Shown here one piece after another: positions 4,283 to 17,696 of a stretch of 23,297 nucleotides of DNA (its first letter is position 1; each line of letters opens with the position of its first letter). The translations under genes and the position numbers were made by a program. The DNA comes from Fonticula alba ATCC 38817 (lineage: Eukaryota > Protista > Nucleariida). The notes beneath the pieces are model-generated. The model ran no database searches. It saw only the letters and a program-made list of their open reading frames with translations, and was not told the origin of the DNA. The stretch lies in assembly GCA_000388065.2 (NCBI GenBank), contig KB932201.1; one strand, written 5' to 3'.

Positions 4283-7072
4283 CGCACACATGCACGCACC
4301 CCCTCTTCCTCGCTCCGTCAGATCTCCGAGGACCCCCTGCCGCACAGTGCCATTGCCCGGCTGGACCTCAACGACTTGATCCTCAAGACCGACAGCCTGA
4401 TTGAGCAGCTGGAGGACAACTTCTGGGAAGGGTATGCCCGCCCGTGGGTCATTCTCTCTTCCGCTCCTCGAGATCGCACGACGCCTCCCCCTGCTTGGCG
4501 GCCTTCTAACGCTCCCTCTTCGCCCCCCCCCTCCCCCCTCGCAGTGCTCTTGCCAGCAAGCTCGACTCGATGAGCGCCGAGGCATGGATCACCACGACCG
4601 GCTGGACCCCCGAGGCCCGCGAGTATTACCGTGTCCTCATTCGGTCGATCACTTGTGTCGAGCCGCCCGAGGTATGAGCATGCGTCCTCCCTCCCGCCTC
4701 CCTCCTGCTTCTCTCTCTCTTTCTCTCTCTCTCGCTCTCTCCTCCCTGTCCCCGGCTGCCTTCTCTGACGGTCGTTTCGTCCCACATGCCAGGTCTCCTT
4801 CCTCCACTGGCTGGCTGGCATCCGGTCGGCCGGCGGCATGCGCCGGACTCTGGCCGGCGATGGCGGCGCACAGGAGCGCAAGATCATCGGTGGTGCGGCC
4901 CAGCTGGCGCACCGCCTGGCCGAGGACGTCCTCATGCCGGGCACCGTGCGTATGCTGCACCGGGTGATCAGCGTGCACTATGCCCATCCCGATTTGCCGT
5001 CCGCCGCCTCGGCCAGCGGCAGTCTCAATGTCGAGCGTCCGGAGGACGGCGCTCGCATTGCCTGCGAGAATGGCGCCATCTTCCTGGCGAAGTATGTTCC
5101 TCCCCCTGGGGTTTTCGCCCGTTCAACCCACCAACCGCCCGGCCCATGCGCACTCCTCTGACACCACCTCCCCACGGCTCTCCTCCTCCTCCTCCTCCTC
5201 CTCCTCCTCCTCCTCCTCCNNNNNNNNNNNNNNNNNNNNNNNNNNNNNNNNNNNNNNNNNNNNNNNNNNNNNNNNNNNNNNNNNNNNNNNNNNNNNNNNN
5301 NNNNNNNNNNNNNNNNNNNNNNNNNNNNNNNNNNNNNNNNNNNNNNNNNNNNNNNNNNNNNNNNNNNNNNNNNNNNNNNNNNNNNNNNNNNNNNNNNNNN
5401 NNNNNNNNNNNNNNNNNNNNNNNNNNNNNNNNNNNNNNNNNNNNNNNNNNNNNNNNNNNNNNNNNNNNNNNNNNNNNNNNNNNNNNNNNNNNNNNNNNNN
5501 NNNNNNNNNNNNNNNNNNNNNNNNNNNNNNNNNNNNNNNNNNNNNNNNNNNNNNNNNNNNNNNNNNNNNNNNNNNNNNNNNNNNNNNNNNNNNNNNNNNN
5601 NNNNNNNNNNNNNNNNNNNNNNNNNNNNNCCTCCTCCTCGCTGCCGCGCCCGCCTTTGCGACATCGCCCCCACCCCCCGCACGGGAAACAGGCGCGTTAT
5701 CATGGCCCTGCCGCCCACGCTCTACCCGACCATCGAGTTCTGCCCGCCGCTTCCGGCGCCCAAGATGCATCTGGCTCAGCGCATGCCGATGGGCTGTGTC
5801 ATCAAGACCATGACCTTCTTCAAGCGCCCGTACTGGCGTGAGAAGGGTCTCTCCGGAACCATCATCGACGACCAGGGCCCGCTGGCCTTGACTTACGACG
5901 ATTGCCAGCCGGTGCGTGTCGGCCGGGCGCGGCCCTCCTCCCCCCCCCCCCCCCCATCAGGATGGCTCCTGCCCCGCGCTGGTGGGCTTCATCGTGGCTG
6001 GGCGTGCTCTCATCGAGAGCAGTTCCCTCCTGCTGCCGGAATGCCCGGCATCACAGGCGGCCGCCGAAGAACAGCGCCGAAAACTGGTCGAGGCCCAGTA
6101 TCGCTCGATCCTGGGCGAGGACATAGAAATCACGGGGTATATAGAAAAAGATTGGTCCTCCGACCGGTTTTCCGGCGGCTGCTACAGCGGCGTCTTCATC
6201 CCCGGCACGGCCACCCTCCTTGCCGGCATTCTGGCCACCCCCCATGGGCCGATCCATTTTGCCGGCACCGAAACCTGCGACGTGTGGTTCGGCTACATGG
6301 AGGGTGCCATCCAGGCGGGCGAGCGCGAGGCCTGCCAGGTGGCCCTGTCACTTGGCCTGCCCTCGTTGCCCATCTCCACCTACCCATCGATGTCGCAGTT
6401 GAACAGCCCCCTGTCCAGTCGGTCCCCCTCGTCGATGTACCTGTCGACGGCCGCTCAGTCGGACTGCCAGTCGTCGCCCTCCTCCTCGTCCGCCAGCGAC
6501 AGTGAGACGTCCTCGCCGCTGGGCTTCGACCCGAAGGCCGGCGCCCCGTTGTCGGACAAGCTGGCCGGCACGGTCCCCGGAAGCCCGGTGCTTCCGAGCG
6601 CCAGCCCGTCGCTCTTTTCCCTGGCCGAGTCGGATGCCTCGTCCCCCTCGGACGAGGAGGGCTATGAGCCTCAGCAGTGGGCCGACCCGGAGTATGTGAA
6701 TTGGGCTGCCAAGGCCGAGCATATTCCCCTCTGGCCGTACCCCAAGATCCAGTACTGGCTGCCGAGTGTGCGTTCCGTGCCTTCCCTCCTGGCGCACGCC
6801 TACCTTGCGGTCTGGCCCCGGGTCCTGCGTTCCCTCCACCTCCGTCCCCTGTCTTCCCCTCCTGCCTTTCGTTGCTCAGCATATGCCGACACTGACTCTG
6901 GTGGTCGCTTTCGCGTGGCGGTTCTCTTTGGGACACTCGCGTCCATCGGCGGGGCGCGCACGCGCGGGTGCAGGTGTCTACCCTTGCCAAGATGACGGTT
7001 GGCGCGTCGGTGGTGGCCCTGGCCGCCTCGGCCGTCGCTGCTGGCGTCATCCTGCGCAGCCGTCTCAACTGA
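3616..7072 (+). CDS. MAO: Flavin-containing monoamine oxidase (MAO-A/B-like), ~676 aa, 8 exons, C-terminal tail anchor
   Basis: Exons 3616-3753, 3915-4145, 4322-4431, 4545-4671, 4793-5091, 5692-5911, 5961-6767, 6974-7072 (2031 nt; all GT-AG, phases consistent). Motifs: GAGLSG (FAD Rossmann), EAQDRVGGR, DSGGAYVGPRQ, GGAQERK, GCVIK, SGGCY, FAGTET...GYMEGAIQAGER. The last exon restores WLPS|VSTLAK plus a 21-aa hydrophobic segment and RSRLN, paralleling the MAO-A tail. Intron 5 spans a 410-N gap, but the flanking exons join seamlessly (AK|RVIMALPP). The last intron (6768-6973) is the least certain. Confidence 0.93.
5181..5639. repeat. (CCT)n microsatellite flanking both sides of the 410-N gap in MAO intron 5
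   Basis: CCT repeats run into the gap at 5219 and resume at 5630, so the gap is probably an unresolved long repeat. Confidence 0.75.
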
Positions 7073-8114: not shown

Positions 8115-8902
8115 TCAAAGGCGAGCAACCTGGTCGCCACAGGACCGGGCGATGGCTTGCTTCCAGTCTTGGCGCATGATCTGGCACTCTGTGTGCGGTC
8201 CACAGCGAGGGGTTAGTCACAAGACGGGCGCGTCCGGATGGCCCTGCGCCTGTTGTGCGTGGGGCAAATGCACTGGCACGTACTCTCGGGAGCGATGTTC
8301 GGCCGGAAAGACTGCCGGCTGCCCAGGAGACTGGCCTGGTCGGCGTCCGGCCCGGTGGCATGGGGCCAGAGGCCAGCACCAACGCCGGCCAGATATGCCG
8401 CCCCGAGGGCGGTCACCTCGCGCATGTGCGGGCGCTCTGTGAAGAGCCGAGGAGGGAGGCGGAGCATGGGATGCATGAGAAATGGCGTCCCACGGGGTAG
8501 GGGCTTGATTTGAAACAGGCCGGAGGGGAATGAGGGAGAAACAAAAAAAAGGGAGGGAGGGGAGGGGGGGGGGGGCGGAGGAAGAAGGCACGCACCGACA
8601 GCCACGCCGGCCAAATCCGACTGCAGCTGCACCAGGAAGTCCGAATGCGTGACACCGCCATCCACATAGAGCGTGGTGTCGGGCTGGGCACTCGAGTCGC
8701 CTGCCGCCGACGCGCGGTCCATCTGGATGGCATCCAGCACATCGCACGTTTGGTGCGCGATGGCCTCGAGCGCCGCACGGCAGAGGTGCCTGCGGTCGGT
8801 GAACTGCGTGAGCCCGGTGATGATACTGTGCTCGGTGAAGGTAAGATTGTCAGAGCCCCGGGGTTGGTACATGAGGCGGGCGTGAGCATTCACGCGCGCG
8901 CG

Positions 8903-8939
<37 letters not shown>

Positions 8940-8942
8940 ACA

Positions 8943-8976
<34 letters not shown>

Positions 8977-11816
8977 AGCGTGTGTGGGCGTAAAAGCAAA
9001 CTGGGAAAGATGCAAGAGATGAAGGGGGAGGAAGTTCCAGGGGGGAGACGCACCCCTGGGCATCTGAGCGCCAGTATGGAGCAAAGAGACCGGAAAAGGC
9101 CGGCACAAAATGGACCCCAGCCGTCGTGTCAACCTCAGCAGCGTATGTGCCTGGTGGTGGCCCAAAAGATGTCAGTGGCGGAAGGCAACCCAGGGACCAA
9201 GGAGGTGGAGACCAAATCGACGCACTAATCTCCTCGGTGGTATTGACCACACCCATCTTGTCGCGAAGCCAATCGAGAGCGACACCGGCGCACGCAACGG
9301 AGCCCTAACAAGCAAGCAGGAGACAGCATGGGGGTCAAACGAGAGGATGTCCAGCATGCACCTCCGGAGTCAGATGGGGGCGGTGGCGATGAGGGGGGCC
9401 GGGTGGGAGATGCCTGGTGTATGGGCGCACCTCGATAGCATAGGCTGGCGGGGCGGTGGGACCCATCTGATAGGCCACCGTGGTCAGCAGGCCATGCTTG
9501 GAGAAGACGGGCCTCTCACCCGTGTTGGAGAGAATGAAGCAACCCGTGCCATAACTGGGGGAAAAGGGGGAAAGAGAGAGAGGGAGAGGGGGGGGGGGGC
9601 AATAGGGACCGTCAGAGAGACCGTGCAAGAAAGAGATGACCGCCCAGGTGCCATGGGCGGAAAGAAAAAAGAGGAGGCCGGAGACGACGTACGTGCTCTT
9701 GGTATCGCCGTCAGCGAAGCAGGAGTGTCCAACCAGAGCGGCCTGCTGGTCACCAGCGCACTGGCGAGCAGGAAAGGGCGCATACGCGGAATCAGTGGGG
9801 GGGGGGGGGGGGCATGTGCGGCAGTATGTTTAATTGGTGAGCGCGTACGCCGGAGAGGGGGATCCCCGCCAGAGGATGGTCCTTCGCGAAGTGGCCATAC
9901 ACCTCGGCGGAGGACCGGATTTCCGGCAGACACGCAGGGTCGATGTCGAAAAAGCTGTGCTCGAGTCAGCGAAAAAAAAAAAAACAACGGTGGGTCCGGT
10001 TGCAAGTCGAAAGGCCGCTGGCAGCATACCGGCAAAGGAGGGGGTCCCACTTGAGCGTTGACAGGTTCATAAGCATTGTGCGGCTGGCATTGGTGACGTC
10101 CGTAACGAAGGAGGCTCGCCCGGTCATATTCTTCGCAAGCACACGCACCACGGAGGGGGGGGGGGTGAGGGAGAAATGGTTAGAGAGATCATGCCGTATG
10201 TGTGTGTGTGTGGGGGGGGGGGGGCGAGAGGGTGCACGGAGGATTGTCCTCGGCAGAAAAGGCGAAAGGAGGGGAGGAGGGGCCCAATCAAGCACGCACC
10301 CAAATCAGCCAGCTGTCCACGGTCGACACGCAAAGGTCTCCGCGGGCGCGGGTGTCGGCGATCGGCCGCGCCTTTGCGCCGGGCTCCGCCTCAGCATCCA
10401 CCAGCCAGCGCCACTTGAGGGCCGAGAAGTAGGTCGCCAGGGGCAGGCCACACAGACGCTGGAAGATGTTGCGCCGGGAAAAGTCCGAGTCGGCGCGCGG
10501 GGTGGCCTGGACACCAGCGGCATTGGCAGTGTCCCGCTCCGCCGGACTGAGCGTGTCCAGGAAGTCATTGGCCCCGGCAGTCAGGCGGTTGACGGTGCCC
10601 ACCGTGCGGGTATCATTCCACACTGCCGGAGAAGAGGGAGGGGAGAATCGAGGAGGAGGTTGGAAAGGGGCGCGGGTGGGCGCAAGAGAAACAAGAGAGT
10701 GCCGGCGATGGAAGGAGGAAGAATGCGAACACACCAATGGCAGGACAGAGTGGATTCCCGGTGGAGCGGTCCCATACAACCAGGGTCTCCCGCTGGTTGG
10801 TCACACCGACGGCTGGGGGTACGCCACCAGACAGGGGTGAGAGGGGGGAAGAGAGGAGGACGCCGGTCCGAGGGCGGGTGTGAGTGGTCACCGGAGGTGG
10901 AAATGTGCCTCGCATGACAGGGAAGCACATGTCCGGACATGGCGGCATACCTTTGATGCTGTCCTTCGGAAAGCCGAGCGCCTCCATGCTGGCGAGGCAG
11001 GCCGCGATGCAGCGGTTCGCCGTGTCCAGCAGGACGTGCGGGTCATGCTCCACCCATCTGGCAAGTTTCAGGGGGGTGAAAAAAGAAGAGGAAGAAGAAA
11101 CAGCGACACATTAGCCAGCGGGGAGGGGGGGGAGGGGGGCCACATGGGAAAGGGGAACACTCCCCGGGCTTTCCACGTCGCAAGAGCAAGGAGCGCACCC
11201 CTCCTTTGGCAAGATTGAGGAGAACTTCTCGTGATGGCTTGCAACCATGGCACCGGCGCGATCGAAGACAATGAACCGAGTGCTGGTGGTGCCCTGGTCA
11301 ATGGCACCGACAAAGGGCAGGGCAAAGGCACGGGGCTGTGATTCGGGAGCCGCGTCCGACGCCGGGGTGTGGCTGGTCATGGTCGTGCTGGAGGGGAGAT
11401 TCTTCAAGGGGATGGCGAGGCAACACCATGCAGGACAGAGTCCGAGGGGGGAGGGGGGAGGGGGGGGGGGGGCATCAGCCAGGGATATGAGCACACAGGC
11501 CGGTCCGCCGTGCGAGGCCCGGCAGCGCCAGGCAGCACACAGACGAGGGCATCTGGAGCCAGCAGGAGGTGCGGGCCATGCGGGAAAAGCGAGGGAGACG
11601 CACACTGTAGTGCCGGAGACCGGTGCCAGTGCAAGGGGGCCGGGCGGGAAAGCGGCGCGAGCGACCGGGGAGGACACTCGGGAGGAGTGCCGAACCAAGA
11701 GGACGACAGGTGAGCTGGCGCAGGCGCGTGGGGGCGAGAGTGGAAGACGAGGTGGCTCGATGCGAGGAGACCACGATCCGTGAGGCCGCGGCGATAGCTC
11801 GCTCAGCTCGGAACAT
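8115..11816 (-). CDS. GK: Glycerol kinase (FGGY family); short form from ATG 11380 (573 aa), long form from ATG 11816 with mitochondrial presequence (~651 aa)
   Basis: Core exons (-): 11380-11199, 11057-10951, 10812-10735, 10622-10300, 10130-10030, 9954-9849, 9760-9693, 9554-9431, 9304-9226, 9150-9054, 8825-8596, 8436-8284, 8188-8115 (1722 nt, phases consistent). Motifs: GAIDQGTTSTR, GVTNQRET, GLPLATYFSALK, TVDSWL, TDVTNASRT, GDQQAAL, KSTYGTGCF, FVPAFSGLFAPYW, RAALEAI, DGG, EVTALGAA. Proposed upstream exon 11816-11604 is spliced in phase 0 to 11401 (lower confidence than the core). Confidence 0.95.
8905..8975. repeat. Interrupted (CA)n/(TG)n microsatellite in a GK intron
   Basis: Read directly from the sequence. 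Confidence 0.9.
11604..11816 (-). other. Putative first exon of glycerol kinase encoding a 71-aa mitochondrial presequence
   Basis: MFRAERAIAAASRIVVSSHRATSSSTLAPTRLRQLTCRPLGSALLPSVLPGRSRRFPARPPCTGTGLRHYS has 12 Arg and one acidic residue, ends in R-H-Y-S, and is followed immediately by donor GTGCGT. The acceptor ttgaag|AAT at 11402/11401 is in frame with GK. Confidence 0.7.
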
Positions 11817-12167
11817 AGGCGGCGCCAACGGCGAGGATTGGCAGGGGGAAGCGAGGTCGGCTTGAGAAGGGGGAGGGAGGAGCGAGAGATGAGCAAAGTG
11901 CAGGGTGGTTGGGCTTGAGAGGTGGGTGCCGGGGTTTGCCTGAGGCAAGGGGCCGGGGCAACATCTCCGCCCTGCCTGCTTGAGTAGTCGCATCGTCCCC
12001 TCGTGCCCCGGCCCGAGGGCTCCTGCTGGCCGGCCATGAGGACAAACGACGAGGAACAGGGCCAAGGGGGGGGGGGAGCGGGGCTCGGGGGGCCATCGAT
12101 CGGGCGATCTGGGTTCGGGGCTGGGGGGGGGGGGGGGGGGGGGGGTCCCCCGAGGGGGGCGCCCGCG

Positions 12168-12206
<39 letters not shown>

Positions 12207-12450
12207 GGGGGCCAAGAAAGATGGCCTCATGCGTTGGCACGAGGGCGGACGGAGCCCGGGTCCCAGCCAGCTGCCGAGTCCCTCCAGCTTCCTTGGTCGG
12301 CCGGTGGAAAAGGCGGCTGAGGAGGGGGGATGTGCGCCCGGCCCCTGGGGTGTGCTCTCTCGGCCTTCCTGTCCGAGGTGCGTGTGGGGTGCGCGGCGGT
12401 TTGGCATGCCGCCTGCGAAAAGGGACCGCGGATTTGAACATGGTTGTAGG

Positions 12451-12830: not shown

Positions 12831-13450
12831 TCACACGACAATCGGGCTTCCGCTGGAGGCACTGCCCTCGGCGGAGGAAGTCAGCGCAGCCAGCTTCGGC
12901 GAGCCGAGCTTGCTCCGGCCAGCCGAGCCGGGCGGCGGCCGGGTGGGCTTATTCCCGCCGGCGGCGCTGGCCGACTTCTGAGACATGAGGATCTTGTCAC
13001 CCAGACTGATGGCGATGCCCTGGGTCTTGGCGCGAATGCGAATGTGGCCGACAATCTTCATGGCGCTGCCACCGGTGGCGGGACCACCAATGGGGCCGAG
13101 GACCGGCGAGCCGGAGCCCAGCCCGGCAGCCAGCGGGGCCGCCGCGCTGGTTCGCTCGAGGCTGACATTGGCCAGGCAATCCTCGCCGAAGATGGACCGC
13201 GCATACAGGTTGGCTGCCAAGAAGTCGCACTCGCCGGCGGTGGCGGCCGCCGGGGTGAGGCACTTCATGTTGGTCGACTTGACCAGCTGGTTCAGGTAGT
13301 CGTGGAGGTCGCTGGGTTGTTTTGTTGTTGGGGTTTGGGGTTTTTTTTCCCCCCCGGCCCCATTCAGGTGTGGATGTGTGTCAGCACATGGAGGATCATC
13401 CAGCCGAGCATGTGGATTGTGTCCGGCGGGAGCAAGAGAGAGAGAGAGGG

Positions 13451-13497
<47 letters not shown>

Positions 13498-16400
13498 GGG
13501 CGACCGGCTTCCCTGGGCGTTGGAGCAGCAAGGGCGCCCCCCGCGCGGTGACAGACGCACGTAATGTCCGTCATGACGGGGATCTTGTTCTCCCACTCGA
13601 ACTCGGTCCACATCCGGCGGAACTGCGACTCGGGGATCTGAATCGGCTGGATGTAGTCCATGACATCGATGCGAATCTCGTGCAGGACCACCACGCGCGA
13701 AGCCTCCGAGGCAGAGGACGAATCGTAGGAGATGTTGCCGAAGATGACCCCGGCCTCGGTGGAGGACACCTTGATGTGGGCGGTCATGTTGCAGAAGTCG
13801 TGCGGCGCCAGGACATGGGACGCCGGGCGCTCGGCCAGCTTCAAGTCGCCAAGGGTGGCCAGCTCGATGGTGACATTTTGAAGGGTGCTGCTGGTCTGAT
13901 TGACCACCAGAATGTCTTCGGGGCGCGTGCGTGCACAGGCACGTGGTGGATGCATGTGCATATGCATGGCCATCCATGCATCGGGATGGGGCCCCGGGTC
14001 AGACGCAGGCAGCCATGAGCGGCGAGGCAAGAGGCAAGAAACACGCACCGAGCAGGATATCATACTGGTTGACATGGACATACGCCTCGGCGTAGAGGGG
14101 GTCCGAGTGGCCAGTCAGCTGGACCACGCGGCTGAGGTTGGAAACCAGCTCCTGGGCGGCCGCGTCGTCGGCACCGATGGCCCGGTTGAGATCGGTCTCA
14201 TACTGCCATACGACGCCGAAGGCGCACCGGCAGCGGGGGGGAGAGGAGTCCAGGGGGGGGCGGGGGGGGGGGGCTCGGCGTCAGATGTGTGGCCCAGGGC
14301 GACTCGGCGGGGGCACAGCAGGCCAGGGGAGCCGGGGAGGAGACGCGAGAGAAAGAAAGAAAAAAAAGAAGAAGATAATAGATGCATCAATGGAGAGAGG
14401 GACAAACCTGATCTTCGGCATTCTCCACGGTCTTGCGGCTCTGCAGCTGGCGCAGGGACAGCCGGGTTTCCGGATGGTCGGCCCGGGCATCGGACTGCTC
14501 GCTGGCCGTGGACTTCTGGGCACGATGCTGCTCGGCCAGGAAGGTGGAGAAAGCCGGCCGGCTGGAGAGGAAGGCCTGCTCGGCCAGGGCATTGGGCTCG
14601 GTCAGCAGCCGAGCGCAGCCAGACAGACGCTCATACGCATCGGCGTCCAAAATCAGGTGCTGGTACAGGTGGCTGCCCTCGCCGGACTGGATCCCGGCCT
14701 CGGTGGCCGAGGCCGACAGGCCGGCCGTCATGTTCAGCGTGTCGCCACCGAGCTTCAGCAGAGCCCCGATGATGCGGATGGCCGAGGTGTAGAACTGATC
14801 CACCAGGCCCTCATTCAGGTCCGCGTGCGTCGGGCCATCCGAGAGGGCCGCCCGCAGGCGCAGGCAAATCTTGGTCACGGCCGCACCAAGAGCACTGGCC
14901 AGGTACGGGTCGCCGTAGAGCAGGAACGACCGGAGCGGGGTATCACACAGCACACCCGCCGGCACGTTCAGCGCCACGCAATAGTACCCGCCAGCGACGA
15001 CCGAGCTGCCGGTCACCTTGTTCCGGGCCGAATTGCCGGTGGCCGAGGAGGAGGTCCCGCGGCCGAGGCCGGACGCGGTGGAGGCCGACACAGCCGACGA
15101 CGCGGAGCCCGAGGACACCGACCGGTTGTCCTCGAAATCGGTGTTGTCCTCCTGGTTACCGGCCTCCTCGACGGGGGCCTCCAGCGGGAAGGGGCCAAGC
15201 GAGCGCTCGAGGGCCTCGAACAGCTCCGGCAGGCGCTCGACCGGGGCAAACTCGCTCAGAACCCAGAGGACCCCCTGGAACACGCGCGACAGGCGGATCT
15301 CCGGCAGCTGGGCAATCAGGCGCTGGGTGACGGCATCGCGAATGCTGACGTTGCGTTCGGCGGCCAGGCTACGGACGAGCGGGGGCGACGAGACGCACGT
15401 GCGCGCGCGTGCACACACACACACACACACACACACACGGAGGGGGAGGGGCCCAAGTATGTTAGACCCACCGAGGGGCAAGGAGAGGGCATGGGGCACG
15501 GGCACAGAGAGCCAGGCGGCGGAGCAGGAGCAAACCCCAGGCAGGACGTACCGAACAAAGTTCACAACATCAATGGCGGTGTCGCCGCGCGACTCGCCGA
15601 TGAGATCCATCAGAAGCTGCAGCGAGGATGAGAGCACGGTCTCCGGGAAGCGCACCGCGCACGAGTGAATCACCTTCACCAGGGCCTGGCGGTAGATGAT
15701 GGACGACTCGTCGTTCTCCGGGGCCGAGCTGGTCCGAGAAAGCTCCTTCCGCAGCAGGACCACCGCCTCGGTGACATGGCGCAGCGGGACCATGGTGATG
15801 GCCAGATCCAGCACGCGCAGGCGGACCTCCAAGTCCGGGCTGCCGCCGGTGGCCAGGGGCACATGAGCGCGGTGAGTGACTGGGCGACGGCCGCGAGGCC
15901 ATGCACATGCCACCAATGGCACGAGGGGGACAGGGGGATACACAGGCGCATGCGGGGGCGGGCGGAGGGAGAAGCAGCAGCGGTGAGTGCATACCTGTTG
16001 AGGATCTTCAGCAGGTCCAGGACCAGGTCGTCCAGAAGGTGCGGATGGCGGCGCTGGAGCTCCTCCACACGGTTGAGGACAATCAGCTTGACATTGTTGT
16101 CGGAGTCCTTCATCACCAGGTCGATGTAGGCAGAGGCAGCGGCTGCATGGGGGAGGGGGAGGGGGGAGGTCAGTGCACCGGCAATGTGTGCGCATATGTG
16201 TGTGTGTGTGTGCGTCTGAGGGGGAGGGGCGGTGGTCCAGGCATGTGGATGTACCCTTGACAGCGGCCGGAGCGCGGGTGATCGACATGAGCGTGGTCGC
16301 GCTCTCATACTTGACAGTGTGCGACTGGGACTCCAGCAGCGCAAAGATGACCTTGACAAAGACGGCCTGGGATTGTGCAAAGGGAGGGAGCAGAGGAAAG

Positions 16401-17696
16401 TCAGGGAGAGAGGGGGGGGGGGGAAAGGGGGCCGGGTGGAGCCGGGCGGCGGGTCGGAGACGCACACGCTCCGAAGGATTGGAGTGGCAATACTTGCGGA
16501 TGAGCTCGATGACGGCCAGCTGGAAGGACTCATCGAAGGTGAGGACATGCTCGATGATGGACCGCAGGTAGTCGATGGCCAGCGGCTGGTCGCAGTTGAT
16601 CAGCAGGTAGAAGGCGTTCTTCCGGGTGGTGGCATCGGTCTCGGTGCGGATGAACTTGGCAATCAACTCCGGCGCATCCGGCACCAGGGTCGAGTCGAAC
16701 TTAAAGATTGAGTGCAGGGCCAGGACGGCGTTCTTGCGGACGTAGCTCATCCGGTGCTCCTGCGCGAGGGGGGGGGGGGGGNNNNNNNNNNNNNNNNNNN
16801 NNNNNNNNNNNNNNNNNNNNNNNNNNNNNNNNNNNNNNNNNNNNNNNNNNNNNNNNNNNNNNNNNNNNNNNNNNNNNNNNNNNNNNNNNNNNNNNNNNNN
16901 NNNNNNNNNNNNNNNNNNNNNNNNNNNNNNNNNNNNNNNNNNNNNNNNNNNNNNNNNNNNNGGGGGGGGGGCATGACACGCACCAGGCACCCACGGATCG
17001 GGTCGATGAGGGGAACAATGATGTCTGCCTCGCGGAGCTTGCACAAGAAGCGCAGGGTAGACCCACGGACATACTCGTTCGGGTGCTGCAGGTCATTGCG
17101 CAGCGCGTTGCTGTGTGTGTGTGTGTGGAGGGGGGGGGGGGGGTGAAACATCAAAAGGCCGGAGGGAAGGGCAAAAGATGGGGCCCAGGGAGGATTGGCG
17201 GGAGCCGAAGACAGGGTGTCAGCGGGAAGAAAGCACATGGGTCGTGGGTGGGAAAAGGATTGACACCCCGGGCCACAGCGGATGTGTCTGTGCGCGCGCA
17301 TGTGCATAAACTCTCGTGCACGGGGGGGAGGGGGGGGGGCGGGGGCTCGCACCAGACCAGGATGAACTCCTGCTTCAGGGTGCCGGAGGGGGTGCGCTTG
17401 GGCACGATCTCATAGTACAGCAGCAGGAGCTTCTTCAGGTGCTTGTCCTTGGTCGGCATGACGAAGCGAATGACATGCATGAGCAGGTCCGGCATCAGGT
17501 CGCCAGCCATCATGGTGCTCAGCAGACGCTTCATGGCCGCCGTGCGGCTGACATCGTCACCGGTCTCGAGCATCTTCTTGAAGTCGTTGATGGTGGGTGC
17601 CTCGCTCGCCAGCGACCCGTAGCCCGGGTCGTAGGAGAGAAGCGTGTAGCAAGACTGGTTGCCGGCCAGCTGGCTGCGGTCACCGGAGGAGGCCAT
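12831..17696 (-). CDS. COPB1: Coatomer subunit beta (beta-COP), ~1087 aa, 10 exons
   Basis: Exons (-): 17696-17353, 17110-16984, 16759-16466, 16366-16255, 16142-15995, 15839-15552, 15368-14408, 14202-14049, 13915-13561, 13311-12831 (3264 nt, phases consistent). Hallmark segments: [164 protein letters not shown]. The gap at 16782-16961 lies inside intron 2. Confidence 0.97.

What the first reader, a model, noticed from the sequence alone, without database searches (positions are those of the whole stretch)
11380..11816. Hidden upstream exon gives glycerol kinase a mitochondrial presequence; one gene may serve mitochondrion, peroxisome and cytosol
A frame the ORF track does not link to GK encodes MFRAERAIAAASRIVVSSHRATSSSTLAPTRLRQLTCRPLGSALLPSVLPGRSRRFPARPPCTGTGLRHYS (12 Arg, 1 Glu, Ser/Ala/Leu-rich). 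It ends in an R-3-type R-H-Y|S processing motif exactly at a phase-0 GTGCGT donor (11603). Splicing to GAAG|AAT (11401) joins it in frame: ...LRHYS-NLPSSTT-MTSH...GAIDQGTT. The long form would go to mitochondria; the form starting at Met 11380 would lack the presequence and expose the -ARL PTS1. Competing N- and C-terminal signals on one GK would place glycerol-3-phosphate production in up to three compartments. The sequence features are seen directly; the targeting is inferred.
Basis: partly seen in the sequence, partly recalled or inferred. Interest (0 to 1): 0.78.

Follow-up and report, generated by a model that had tools for sequence, protein, structure and literature searches.

The report
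Glycerol kinase with two address tags
The upstream exon of the Fonticula alba glycerol kinase gene is real and spliced as described, but the public gene model already includes it, and its proposed role in sending the enzyme to mitochondria, peroxisomes and cytosol is plausible and untested.

Summary
The window is Fonticula alba. The exon at 11816-11604 (minus strand) exists and is spliced in frame to 11401. Transcript contigs from two samples carry the 11604|11401 joint and reach 116 nt upstream of the ATG. The exon is not hidden. The public protein XP_009492168.1 (651 aa) equals my 14-exon model.

The enzyme is a true glycerol kinase over residues 101-644. Residues 1-100 match no family and no homologue. 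The extension looks like a mitochondrial presequence: 12 Arg, 1 Glu, Ser/Thr-rich, RHY|S. Controls weaken this. On this C-rich strand 11% of non-coding 71-aa windows look as basic and acid-poor, and 56% of 78-codon windows are open. Synonymous codon use moderately supports real coding.

The protein ends in -ARL, a canonical PTS1. Only one of 119 other homologues has one.

No RNA supports a start inside the intron. Leaky scanning fits better: AUG1 has C at -3, AUG2 has A at -3, and no AUG lies between them.

Proteins with both a mitochondrial signal and a PTS1, and peroxisomal glycerol kinases, are known. This is a candidate new member of a known kind, and the targeting is unproven.

The parts
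11817..11932 (-). 5' untranslated leader, minimum extent, with no AUG
   Evidence: Transcript contigs of X1 and X2 both end at 11932. No ATG occurs in these 116 nt.
11604..11816 (-). Coding exon 1: 71 codons, MFRAER...LRHYS, a presequence-like extension. AUG1 at 11816-11814 sits in a weak context (ccgcctATGt).
   Evidence: ORF and model. Identical to the public 651-aa protein. Present in spliced RNA contigs. Composition and motifs. Codon-usage test. Start context.
11402..11603 (-). Intron 1: 202 nt, phase 0, GTGCGT...TTGAAG, with a CTGAT branch-like site 73 nt from the acceptor and a C-rich tract
   Evidence: Skipped in RNA contigs of two samples. Splice-site summary.
11199..11401 (-). Coding exon 2: linker NLPSSTT, then the second in-frame AUG (M79, 11380-11378, context acgaccATGa), then the start of the glycerol kinase core (FVGAIDQGTTS)
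   Evidence: The next ATG after AUG1 in the mRNA lies at +234.
8115..11816 (-). Whole glycerol kinase coding span: 14 exons, 13 GT-AG introns, 651 aa
   Evidence: Model equals P0001. Annotated gene range of 3702 nt. TIGR01311 at 621 bits, above the 590 cut-off. FGGY_N and FGGY_C.
8118..8126 (-). C-terminal Ala-Arg-Leu codons, a PTS1-type tripeptide, followed by TGA at 8117-8115
   Evidence: Matches [SAC][KRH][LM]; chance from composition is about 0.003; only 1 of 119 other homologues has such an end.

Best explanation
This is the single annotated glycerol kinase gene of Fonticula alba. Its one observed mRNA starts at least 116 nt upstream of the first AUG (11816). Shown: exon 1 is spliced in phase 0 to exon 2, and this adds 78 residues ahead of the second in-frame AUG (M79) and about 100 residues ahead of the conserved kinase fold. 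Inferred: translation from AUG1 gives a 651-aa protein. Its Arg/Ser/Thr/Ala-rich, almost acid-free N-terminus has an amphipathic start (residues 3-13) and acts as a cleavable mitochondrial presequence. RHY|S is one possible MPP/Icp55-type processing site. Also inferred: AUG1 has a pyrimidine at -3 and T at +4, AUG2 has ACC-AUG-A, and no AUG lies between them. Some ribosomes should therefore scan past AUG1 and make a 573-aa form without the presequence. In that form the C-terminal -ARL can act as a PTS1 and take it to peroxisomes, with the remainder staying cytosolic. The long form carries both signals, so it may also be shared between the organelles by competition, as described for yeast Ptc5 and Pxp2.
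For: Exon, junction and leader come from RNA contigs. The model is identical to the public protein. The glycerol kinase equivalog model covers residues 101-644 only, and residues 1-105 hit no Pfam family. The extension is absent from the 119 other best homologues. Its composition is 12 R, 0 K, 1 E, 0 D and 16 S+T, which is more S+T than in any of 634 non-coding windows. The peak helical moment is 0.69 at residues 3-13, there is one R-x-Y-S motif, and there is no transmembrane segment and no PTS2. Synonymous codon score of exon 1 is 0.200 in frame 0 against 0.10 and 0.12 in the other frames. The kinase core scores 0.228 +/- 0.076 and non-coding windows score -0.01 +/- 0.087, with 1.4% reaching the exon 1 value. 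AUG contexts, and purine at -3 in all three neighbouring genes. No AUG in the leader or between AUG1 and AUG2. ARL matches the strict PTS1 pattern, with a chance of about 0.003. F. alba is reported to have MPP (PMC9291397). Proteins with a mitochondrial signal plus a PTS1, and isoforms made from alternative starts, are documented (PMC7217942; PMC9549241).
Against: The presequence look is cheap here. Non-coding 71-aa windows on this strand average 10.8 basic and 3.4 acidic residues, and 11% have at least 10 basic and at most 1 acidic. Stop-free 78-codon windows make up 56%, so an open in-frame upstream AUG has about a 0.19 chance. Absence of an AUG between the two starts has P of about 0.29 under shuffling. 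Exon 1 shows no GC periodicity by codon position. The 116-nt leader also scores 0.18 in one frame in the codon test. No close relative exists, since the best homologue is 49% identical, so conservation cannot be tested. No targeting predictor, Ribo-seq or localisation data were available. A matrix glycerol kinase has no obvious metabolic role (my own knowledge): mitochondrial FAD-linked G3P dehydrogenase faces the intermembrane space. Unchecked notes from this scan say one F. alba PEX5-like protein has an altered PTS1 pocket. The Kozak comparison rests on three genes.
Confidence: 0.42

Rival explanations
1. The extension is a by-product of composition. A C-rich leader happens to hold an in-frame AUG in a weak context. 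Most ribosomes start at M79, and the long form is minor and has no targeting role. Glycerol kinase is then cytosolic, or peroxisomal through ARL.
For: Open frames and Arg-rich, acid-poor peptides are common in non-coding sequence on this strand. AUG1 has the weakest class of context. The base composition of exon 1 is closer to introns and leader than to the kinase core. The extension is unique to this species. Other notes of this scan flag presequence-like N-termini on unexpected F. alba proteins, which hints at a genome-wide bias (unchecked).
Against: AUG1 is the first AUG of the mRNA, so under the scanning model it should be used at least in part. The frame-0 codon score lies in the coding range and above 98.6% of non-coding windows. 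S+T content exceeds that of every non-coding window. From my own knowledge, not checked here: random basic, acid-poor N-termini often do drive import, so even an accidental extension would probably redirect the protein.
Confidence: 0.3
2. The enzyme is mitochondrial only. The presequence works and dominates, and the -ARL ending is a chance feature that is not read.
For: An N-terminal signal is exposed first during synthesis. The C-terminus has the usual family length, so ARL merely replaces the common ...DWA/V ending. A scan note reports an altered PTS1 pocket in one PEX5-like protein (unchecked). Yeast Gut1 is described as a mitochondrial protein (PMC12904895).
Against: The strict PTS1 tripeptide has a chance of about 0.003 and is almost absent from homologues. 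Another F. alba enzyme is reported to end in ARL (unchecked). Proteins with competing signals do reach peroxisomes (PMC7217942).
Confidence: 0.15
3. One reading: a second promoter inside intron 1 yields an mRNA that starts at M79.
For: Alternative transcription starts are a known way to drop a presequence, as in carnitine acetyltransferases (PMC9549241). Contigs drop rare variants, so absence is not shown.
Against: Only the spliced form was seen. Apart from a repeat that also occurs elsewhere, no contig lies on the intron. The intron carries several ATGs. The last one (11429) opens an out-of-frame 43-codon ORF across M79, so a usable start would have to lie within about 48 nt of M79.
Confidence: 0.08

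Closest known systems
Fungal proteins with an N-terminal mitochondrial signal and a C-terminal PTS1 (S. cerevisiae Ptc5, Pxp2, Dpi8; carnitine acetyltransferase Cat2)
   Same: They have a basic N-terminal presequence plus an [SA][RK][L]-type end on one polypeptide. Distribution between mitochondria and peroxisomes arises by signal competition or by alternative starts (PMC7217942, PMC10906886, PMC9549241).
   Different: The enzyme family differs. Ptc5 has a transmembrane segment and transits through mitochondria, and none is present here. For F. alba nothing has been localised. Here the short form would arise by leaky scanning of one mRNA, which is inferred and not shown.
Glycosomal glycerol kinase of kinetoplastids and diplonemids
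   Same: A glycerol kinase with a C-terminal PTS1 that places glycerol-3-phosphate production in a peroxisome-derived organelle (PMC9512073).
   Different: Those enzymes lack a mitochondrial-type extension and work within a compartmentalised glycolysis. F. alba is an opisthokont, and no such context is known for it.
Mitochondrion-associated glycerol kinases of opisthokonts (holozoan forms with a C-terminal hydrophobic tail; yeast Gut1)
   Same: The enzyme is linked to mitochondria. Branchiostoma, Asterias and Capsaspora homologues carry a hydrophobic C-terminal tail. Gut1 is described as mitochondrial (PMC12904895).
   Different: F. alba has no tail. It has an N-terminal, cleavable-type extension, which would put the enzyme inside the organelle, not on its surface.
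Public annotation XP_009492168.1 / A0A058ZG85_FONAL
   Same: The 651-aa sequence and the gene span are identical.
   Different: The names attached to the record in these collections say only 'glycerol kinase' and mention no targeting.

Membership tests
Glycerol kinase (FGGY family, GlpK equivalog) | Full-length match to the curated glycerol kinase model above its cut-off | tested here: met
   TIGR01311 scores 621.4 bits against a cut-off of 590.35, over residues 101-644 and profile positions 2-494 of 496.
Glycerol kinase (FGGY family, GlpK equivalog) | FGGY_N and FGGY_C domains and the N-terminal DQGTTS phosphate-binding motif | tested here: met
   PF00370 at 5.8e-63 and PF02782 at 9.9e-40. 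AIDQGTTS aligns with all homologues.
Cleavable mitochondrial matrix presequence | N-terminal, net positive, almost no acidic residues, rich in Ser/Thr/Ala/Leu, outside the mature fold | tested here: met
   12 R, 1 E and 16 S+T in 71 residues, and residues 1-100 lie outside the kinase model. The test is weak: 11% of non-coding windows pass the charge criterion.
Cleavable mitochondrial matrix presequence | Amphipathic helix near the N-terminus | tested here: inconclusive
   The peak moment is 0.69 at residues 3-13, but 14% of shuffles and 19% of non-coding windows reach it.
Cleavable mitochondrial matrix presequence | MPP-type cleavage motif (R-2 or R-3) | tested here: inconclusive
   One R-x-Y-S lies at residues 68-71, and there are many R-2 candidates. 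One such motif is expected about 0.5 times by chance (my estimate counts). MPP is reported for F. alba (PMC9291397).
Cleavable mitochondrial matrix presequence | Drives import and is cleaved | not testable with these tools
   No predictor, proteomics or localisation data were available.
PTS1 peroxisomal matrix protein | C-terminal tripeptide [SAC][KRH][LM] at the very end | tested here: met
   The protein ends -ARL followed by TGA. The chance from composition is about 0.003.
PTS1 peroxisomal matrix protein | Recognised by PEX5 in an organism with peroxisomes | not tested
   Only unchecked scan notes mention PEX5-like genes in this genome, one with an altered pocket. No paper on F. alba peroxins was found.
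PTS2 peroxisomal signal | N-terminal R-[LVIQ]-x-x-[LVIHQ]-[LSGAK]-x-[HQ]-[LAF] | tested here: not met
   Neither the strict nor the loose pattern matches residues 1-111.
Two isoforms from one mRNA by leaky scanning | First AUG in a weak context, next AUG in frame and in a strong context, no AUG between them | tested here: met
   AUG1 reads ccgcctATGt and AUG2 reads acgaccATGa. The ATGs in the mRNA lie at 0, +234 and +366. Three neighbouring genes all have a purine at -3.
Two isoforms from one mRNA by leaky scanning | Both starts used in vivo | not testable with these tools
   The species-label RNA runs that I laid held nothing from this locus. No ribosome profiling was available.

The most novel reading that the evidence does not exclude
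Fonticula alba sends one glycerol kinase both into mitochondria and into peroxisomes from a single mRNA by leaky scanning. As far as the literature I searched shows, that would be a peroxisomal glycerol kinase outside the glycosome-bearing euglenozoans. It would also link the enzyme to mitochondria by a different route from the tail-bearing holozoan enzymes, using a presequence that arose from C-rich leader sequence.
Probability: 0.22. Interest if true: 0.5.

Novelty: new member of a known kind. Interest (0 to 1): 0.3.

Why it matters
If the targeting is real, it adds glycerol kinase to the enzymes shared between mitochondria and peroxisomes through competing signals. It would also show glycerol-3-phosphate being made inside organelles in a close relative of fungi. 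It could illustrate how a presequence arises from a compositionally biased leader. The practical lesson is a caution. In this C-rich genome, presequence-like N-termini and long open frames arise easily, so each such call needs a composition control. The gene structure itself adds nothing to the public annotation.

Tried and rejected
1. Word search with the 71-aa peptide, using the enclosing 433-aa ORF to set the length range. It found only the F. alba protein itself, so there is no sign that the exon was borrowed from another gene.
2. RNA runs X12 and X13, listed under the same species label. They held nothing from this locus beyond low-complexity fragments, so no raw reads were available to map transcript ends or count isoforms.
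3. PTS2 patterns and transmembrane or signal-peptide hydrophobicity in the extension. There is no match, and the best 19-residue Kyte-Doolittle mean is 0.59.
4. GC periodicity by codon position. It was uninformative for exon 1 at 0.66, 0.70 and 0.70. I replaced it with a synonymous-codon test.
5. Literature on F. alba peroxins or peroxisomes and on glycerol kinases with presequences. Nothing specific was found.
6. A nucleariid orthologue for conservation. The one unnamed EukProt hit turned out to be the amoebozoan Clastostelium. The best homologues are at most 49% identical.
7. I did not run the large representative search or a structure prediction. The protein family is settled, and the extension is low in complexity.

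Full report
**Identity and observation**

The frame ends at 11604, directly before a GTGCGT donor. I built the whole gene by hand from GT-AG sites and family motifs. It has 14 exons, 1956 nt and 651 codons with no stop, and it ends ...GDQVARL-TGA.

A word search with the 71-residue peptide returned one protein, 'glycerol kinase [Fonticula alba]', 651 aa and 100% identical. Its full sequence equals my model. The accessions are XP_009492168.1, KCV72467.1 and A0A058ZG85. The annotated gene spans 3702 nt on KB932201.1, which is exactly window 8115-11816. The exon is therefore real but not hidden.

**RNA evidence**

Four runs from 2012 held about 43% of the sampled words of the gene region, roughly what exons alone would give. 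I laid two of them, from different samples of one study, on 10700-12400. Each gave one contig of about 2.13 kb that skips 11402-11603, 11058-11198 and 10813-10950. All three skips are GT..AG on the minus strand. Both contigs run on to 11932. The 11604|11401 joint is thus confirmed, and the leader is at least 116 nt long.

No contig lies on intron 1, apart from a GAGGGGG-type repeat that also belongs to other loci. Contigs cannot exclude rare isoforms. The two raw-read RNA runs listed under the same species label held nothing from this locus, so I could not measure transcript ends or isoform ratios.

**What the protein is**

The curated glycerol kinase equivalog model matches above its cut-off (621 against 590 bits). 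It covers residues 101-644, and Pfam finds FGGY_N and FGGY_C. Residues 1-105 match no family.

The best homologues are zoopagomycete, chytrid, mucoromycete and animal enzymes, and they are only about 49% identical. Among the 120 best hits no other protein has a comparable basic extension. The two others with long N-termini are unrelated in sequence and composition. The alignment also shows two internal insertions unique to F. alba. Its C-terminus has the normal length, with ARL in place of the usual ...DWA/V ending.

**Is the extension a presequence?**

The descriptive features fit:
- It has 12 Arg, no Lys, one Glu, no Asp and 16 Ser+Thr.
- A segment at residues 3-13 has a helical hydrophobic moment of 0.69.
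- There is one R-x-Y-S motif at residues 68-71.
- There is no transmembrane stretch and no PTS2.

The minus strand here is very C-rich, with 44% C in exon 1 and 41% in the introns. That alone favours Arg, Pro, Ser, Ala and Leu codons and disfavours Asp, Glu and stop codons. The controls show this clearly:
- Stop-free 71-residue windows from the gene's introns and flanks average 10.8 basic and 3.4 acidic residues.
- 30% of those windows have at least 12 basic residues.
- 11% combine at least 10 basic with at most 1 acidic residue.
- 56% of 78-codon non-coding windows are open, so an in-frame open upstream AUG has a chance of about 0.19.
- Only the Ser+Thr content exceeds every control window.
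- I estimate the R-3 motif is expected about 0.5 times in such a peptide, so its position at the exon end is not strong evidence.

A synonymous-codon score gives a more discriminating test. I trained it on the neighbouring coatomer-beta gene.
- Exon 1 scores 0.200 in frame 0, against 0.10 and 0.12 in the other frames.
- The kinase core scores 0.228 +/- 0.076.
- Non-coding windows score -0.01 +/- 0.087, and 1.4% of them reach the exon 1 value.

This is moderate support that the frame is genuinely coding. The caveat is that the short leader also scores 0.18 in one frame.

**How a short form could arise**

In the observed mRNA, the leader has no AUG, and the ATGs lie at 0, +234 (M79) and +366. 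AUG1 reads ccgcctATGt, with a pyrimidine at -3 and T at +4. AUG2 reads acgaccATGa. The three neighbouring annotated genes all have a purine at -3.

Under the scanning model this arrangement predicts partial bypass of AUG1 and initiation at M79. One mRNA would then give both a long and a short form.

That idea has no RNA support. It would also have to start within about 48 nt of M79 to avoid an out-of-frame AUG at 11429. The support is modest, because absence of an intervening AUG has P of about 0.29 under shuffling.

**The C-terminal signal**

ARL fits the strict PTS1 pattern. From the protein's own composition the chance is about 0.003. Only one of the 119 other homologues ends in such a tripeptide: Capsaspora, with SKL after a hydrophobic tail.

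I could not verify whether F. alba reads PTS1. I found no paper on its peroxins. Unchecked notes of this scan mention two PEX5-like genes, one with an altered PTS1 pocket, and another enzyme that ends in ARL.

**Comparison with what is known**

- Proteins carrying both a mitochondrial presequence and a PTS1 are documented in yeast. So is their sharing between the organelles by competition or by alternative starts (PMC7217942, PMC10906886, PMC9549241).
- Glycerol kinase with a PTS1 is standard in glycosomes (PMC9512073).
- Glycerol kinase linked to mitochondria is also not new. Holozoan homologues carry a hydrophobic C-terminal tail, and yeast Gut1 is described as mitochondrial (PMC12904895).
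- MPP is reported for F. alba (PMC9291397).

**Verdict**

The sequence observation is confirmed and has RNA support, but the gene model is already public. The dual or triple targeting idea is reasonable and testable, yet it rests on features that this genome produces easily. Rough odds from the evidence above:
- About 0.55-0.6 that the long form is imported into mitochondria.
- About 0.5 that ARL works as a PTS1.
- About 0.4 that the combined picture in the best explanation holds.

It would be a new member of a known kind, of moderate-to-low interest.

Noticed in passing
window 5220-5629: A run of N (an assembly gap) flanked by (CTC)n repeats lies inside the flavin amine-oxidase/DAO gene on the plus strand. 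It explains the apparent GC dip at 5001-6000.
   Followed up: partly
window 12110-12220: Very long homopolymer runs lie in the spacer between coatomer-beta and glycerol kinase, about 180-290 nt upstream of the observed mRNA 5' end. They include 37 C on the plus strand at 12168-12204. The reads tool skipped this stretch as a repeat.
   Followed up: no
window 8906-8976: An (AC)35 microsatellite lies inside glycerol kinase intron 11.
   Followed up: no
P0005, P0011, P0079 (alignment): Holozoan glycerol kinases (Branchiostoma, Asterias, Capsaspora) carry a C-terminal hydrophobic tail that Fonticula and the fungal homologues lack. The Capsaspora tail ends in -SKL, so it combines a tail anchor with a PTS1-like end.
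   Followed up: no
P0001, about residues 219-241 and 279-285: F. alba glycerol kinase has two internal insertions relative to all 18 aligned homologues. The first is Ala/Asp/Thr-rich and the second is AEAEPGA. Their function is unknown.
   Followed up: no
window 8189-11603 (13 introns): All 13 donors read GT[AG][CT]G[CT], with a pyrimidine at +4. GTGCG[TC] accounts for 7 of the 13. Two acceptors are GAAG, not the usual YAG.
   Followed up: yes
window 12834-17696, minus strand: The upstream neighbour is coatomer beta (Adaptin_N, Coatamer_beta_C, Coatomer_b_Cpla; 1052 aa in the public model). It lies on the same strand as glycerol kinase.
   Followed up: partly
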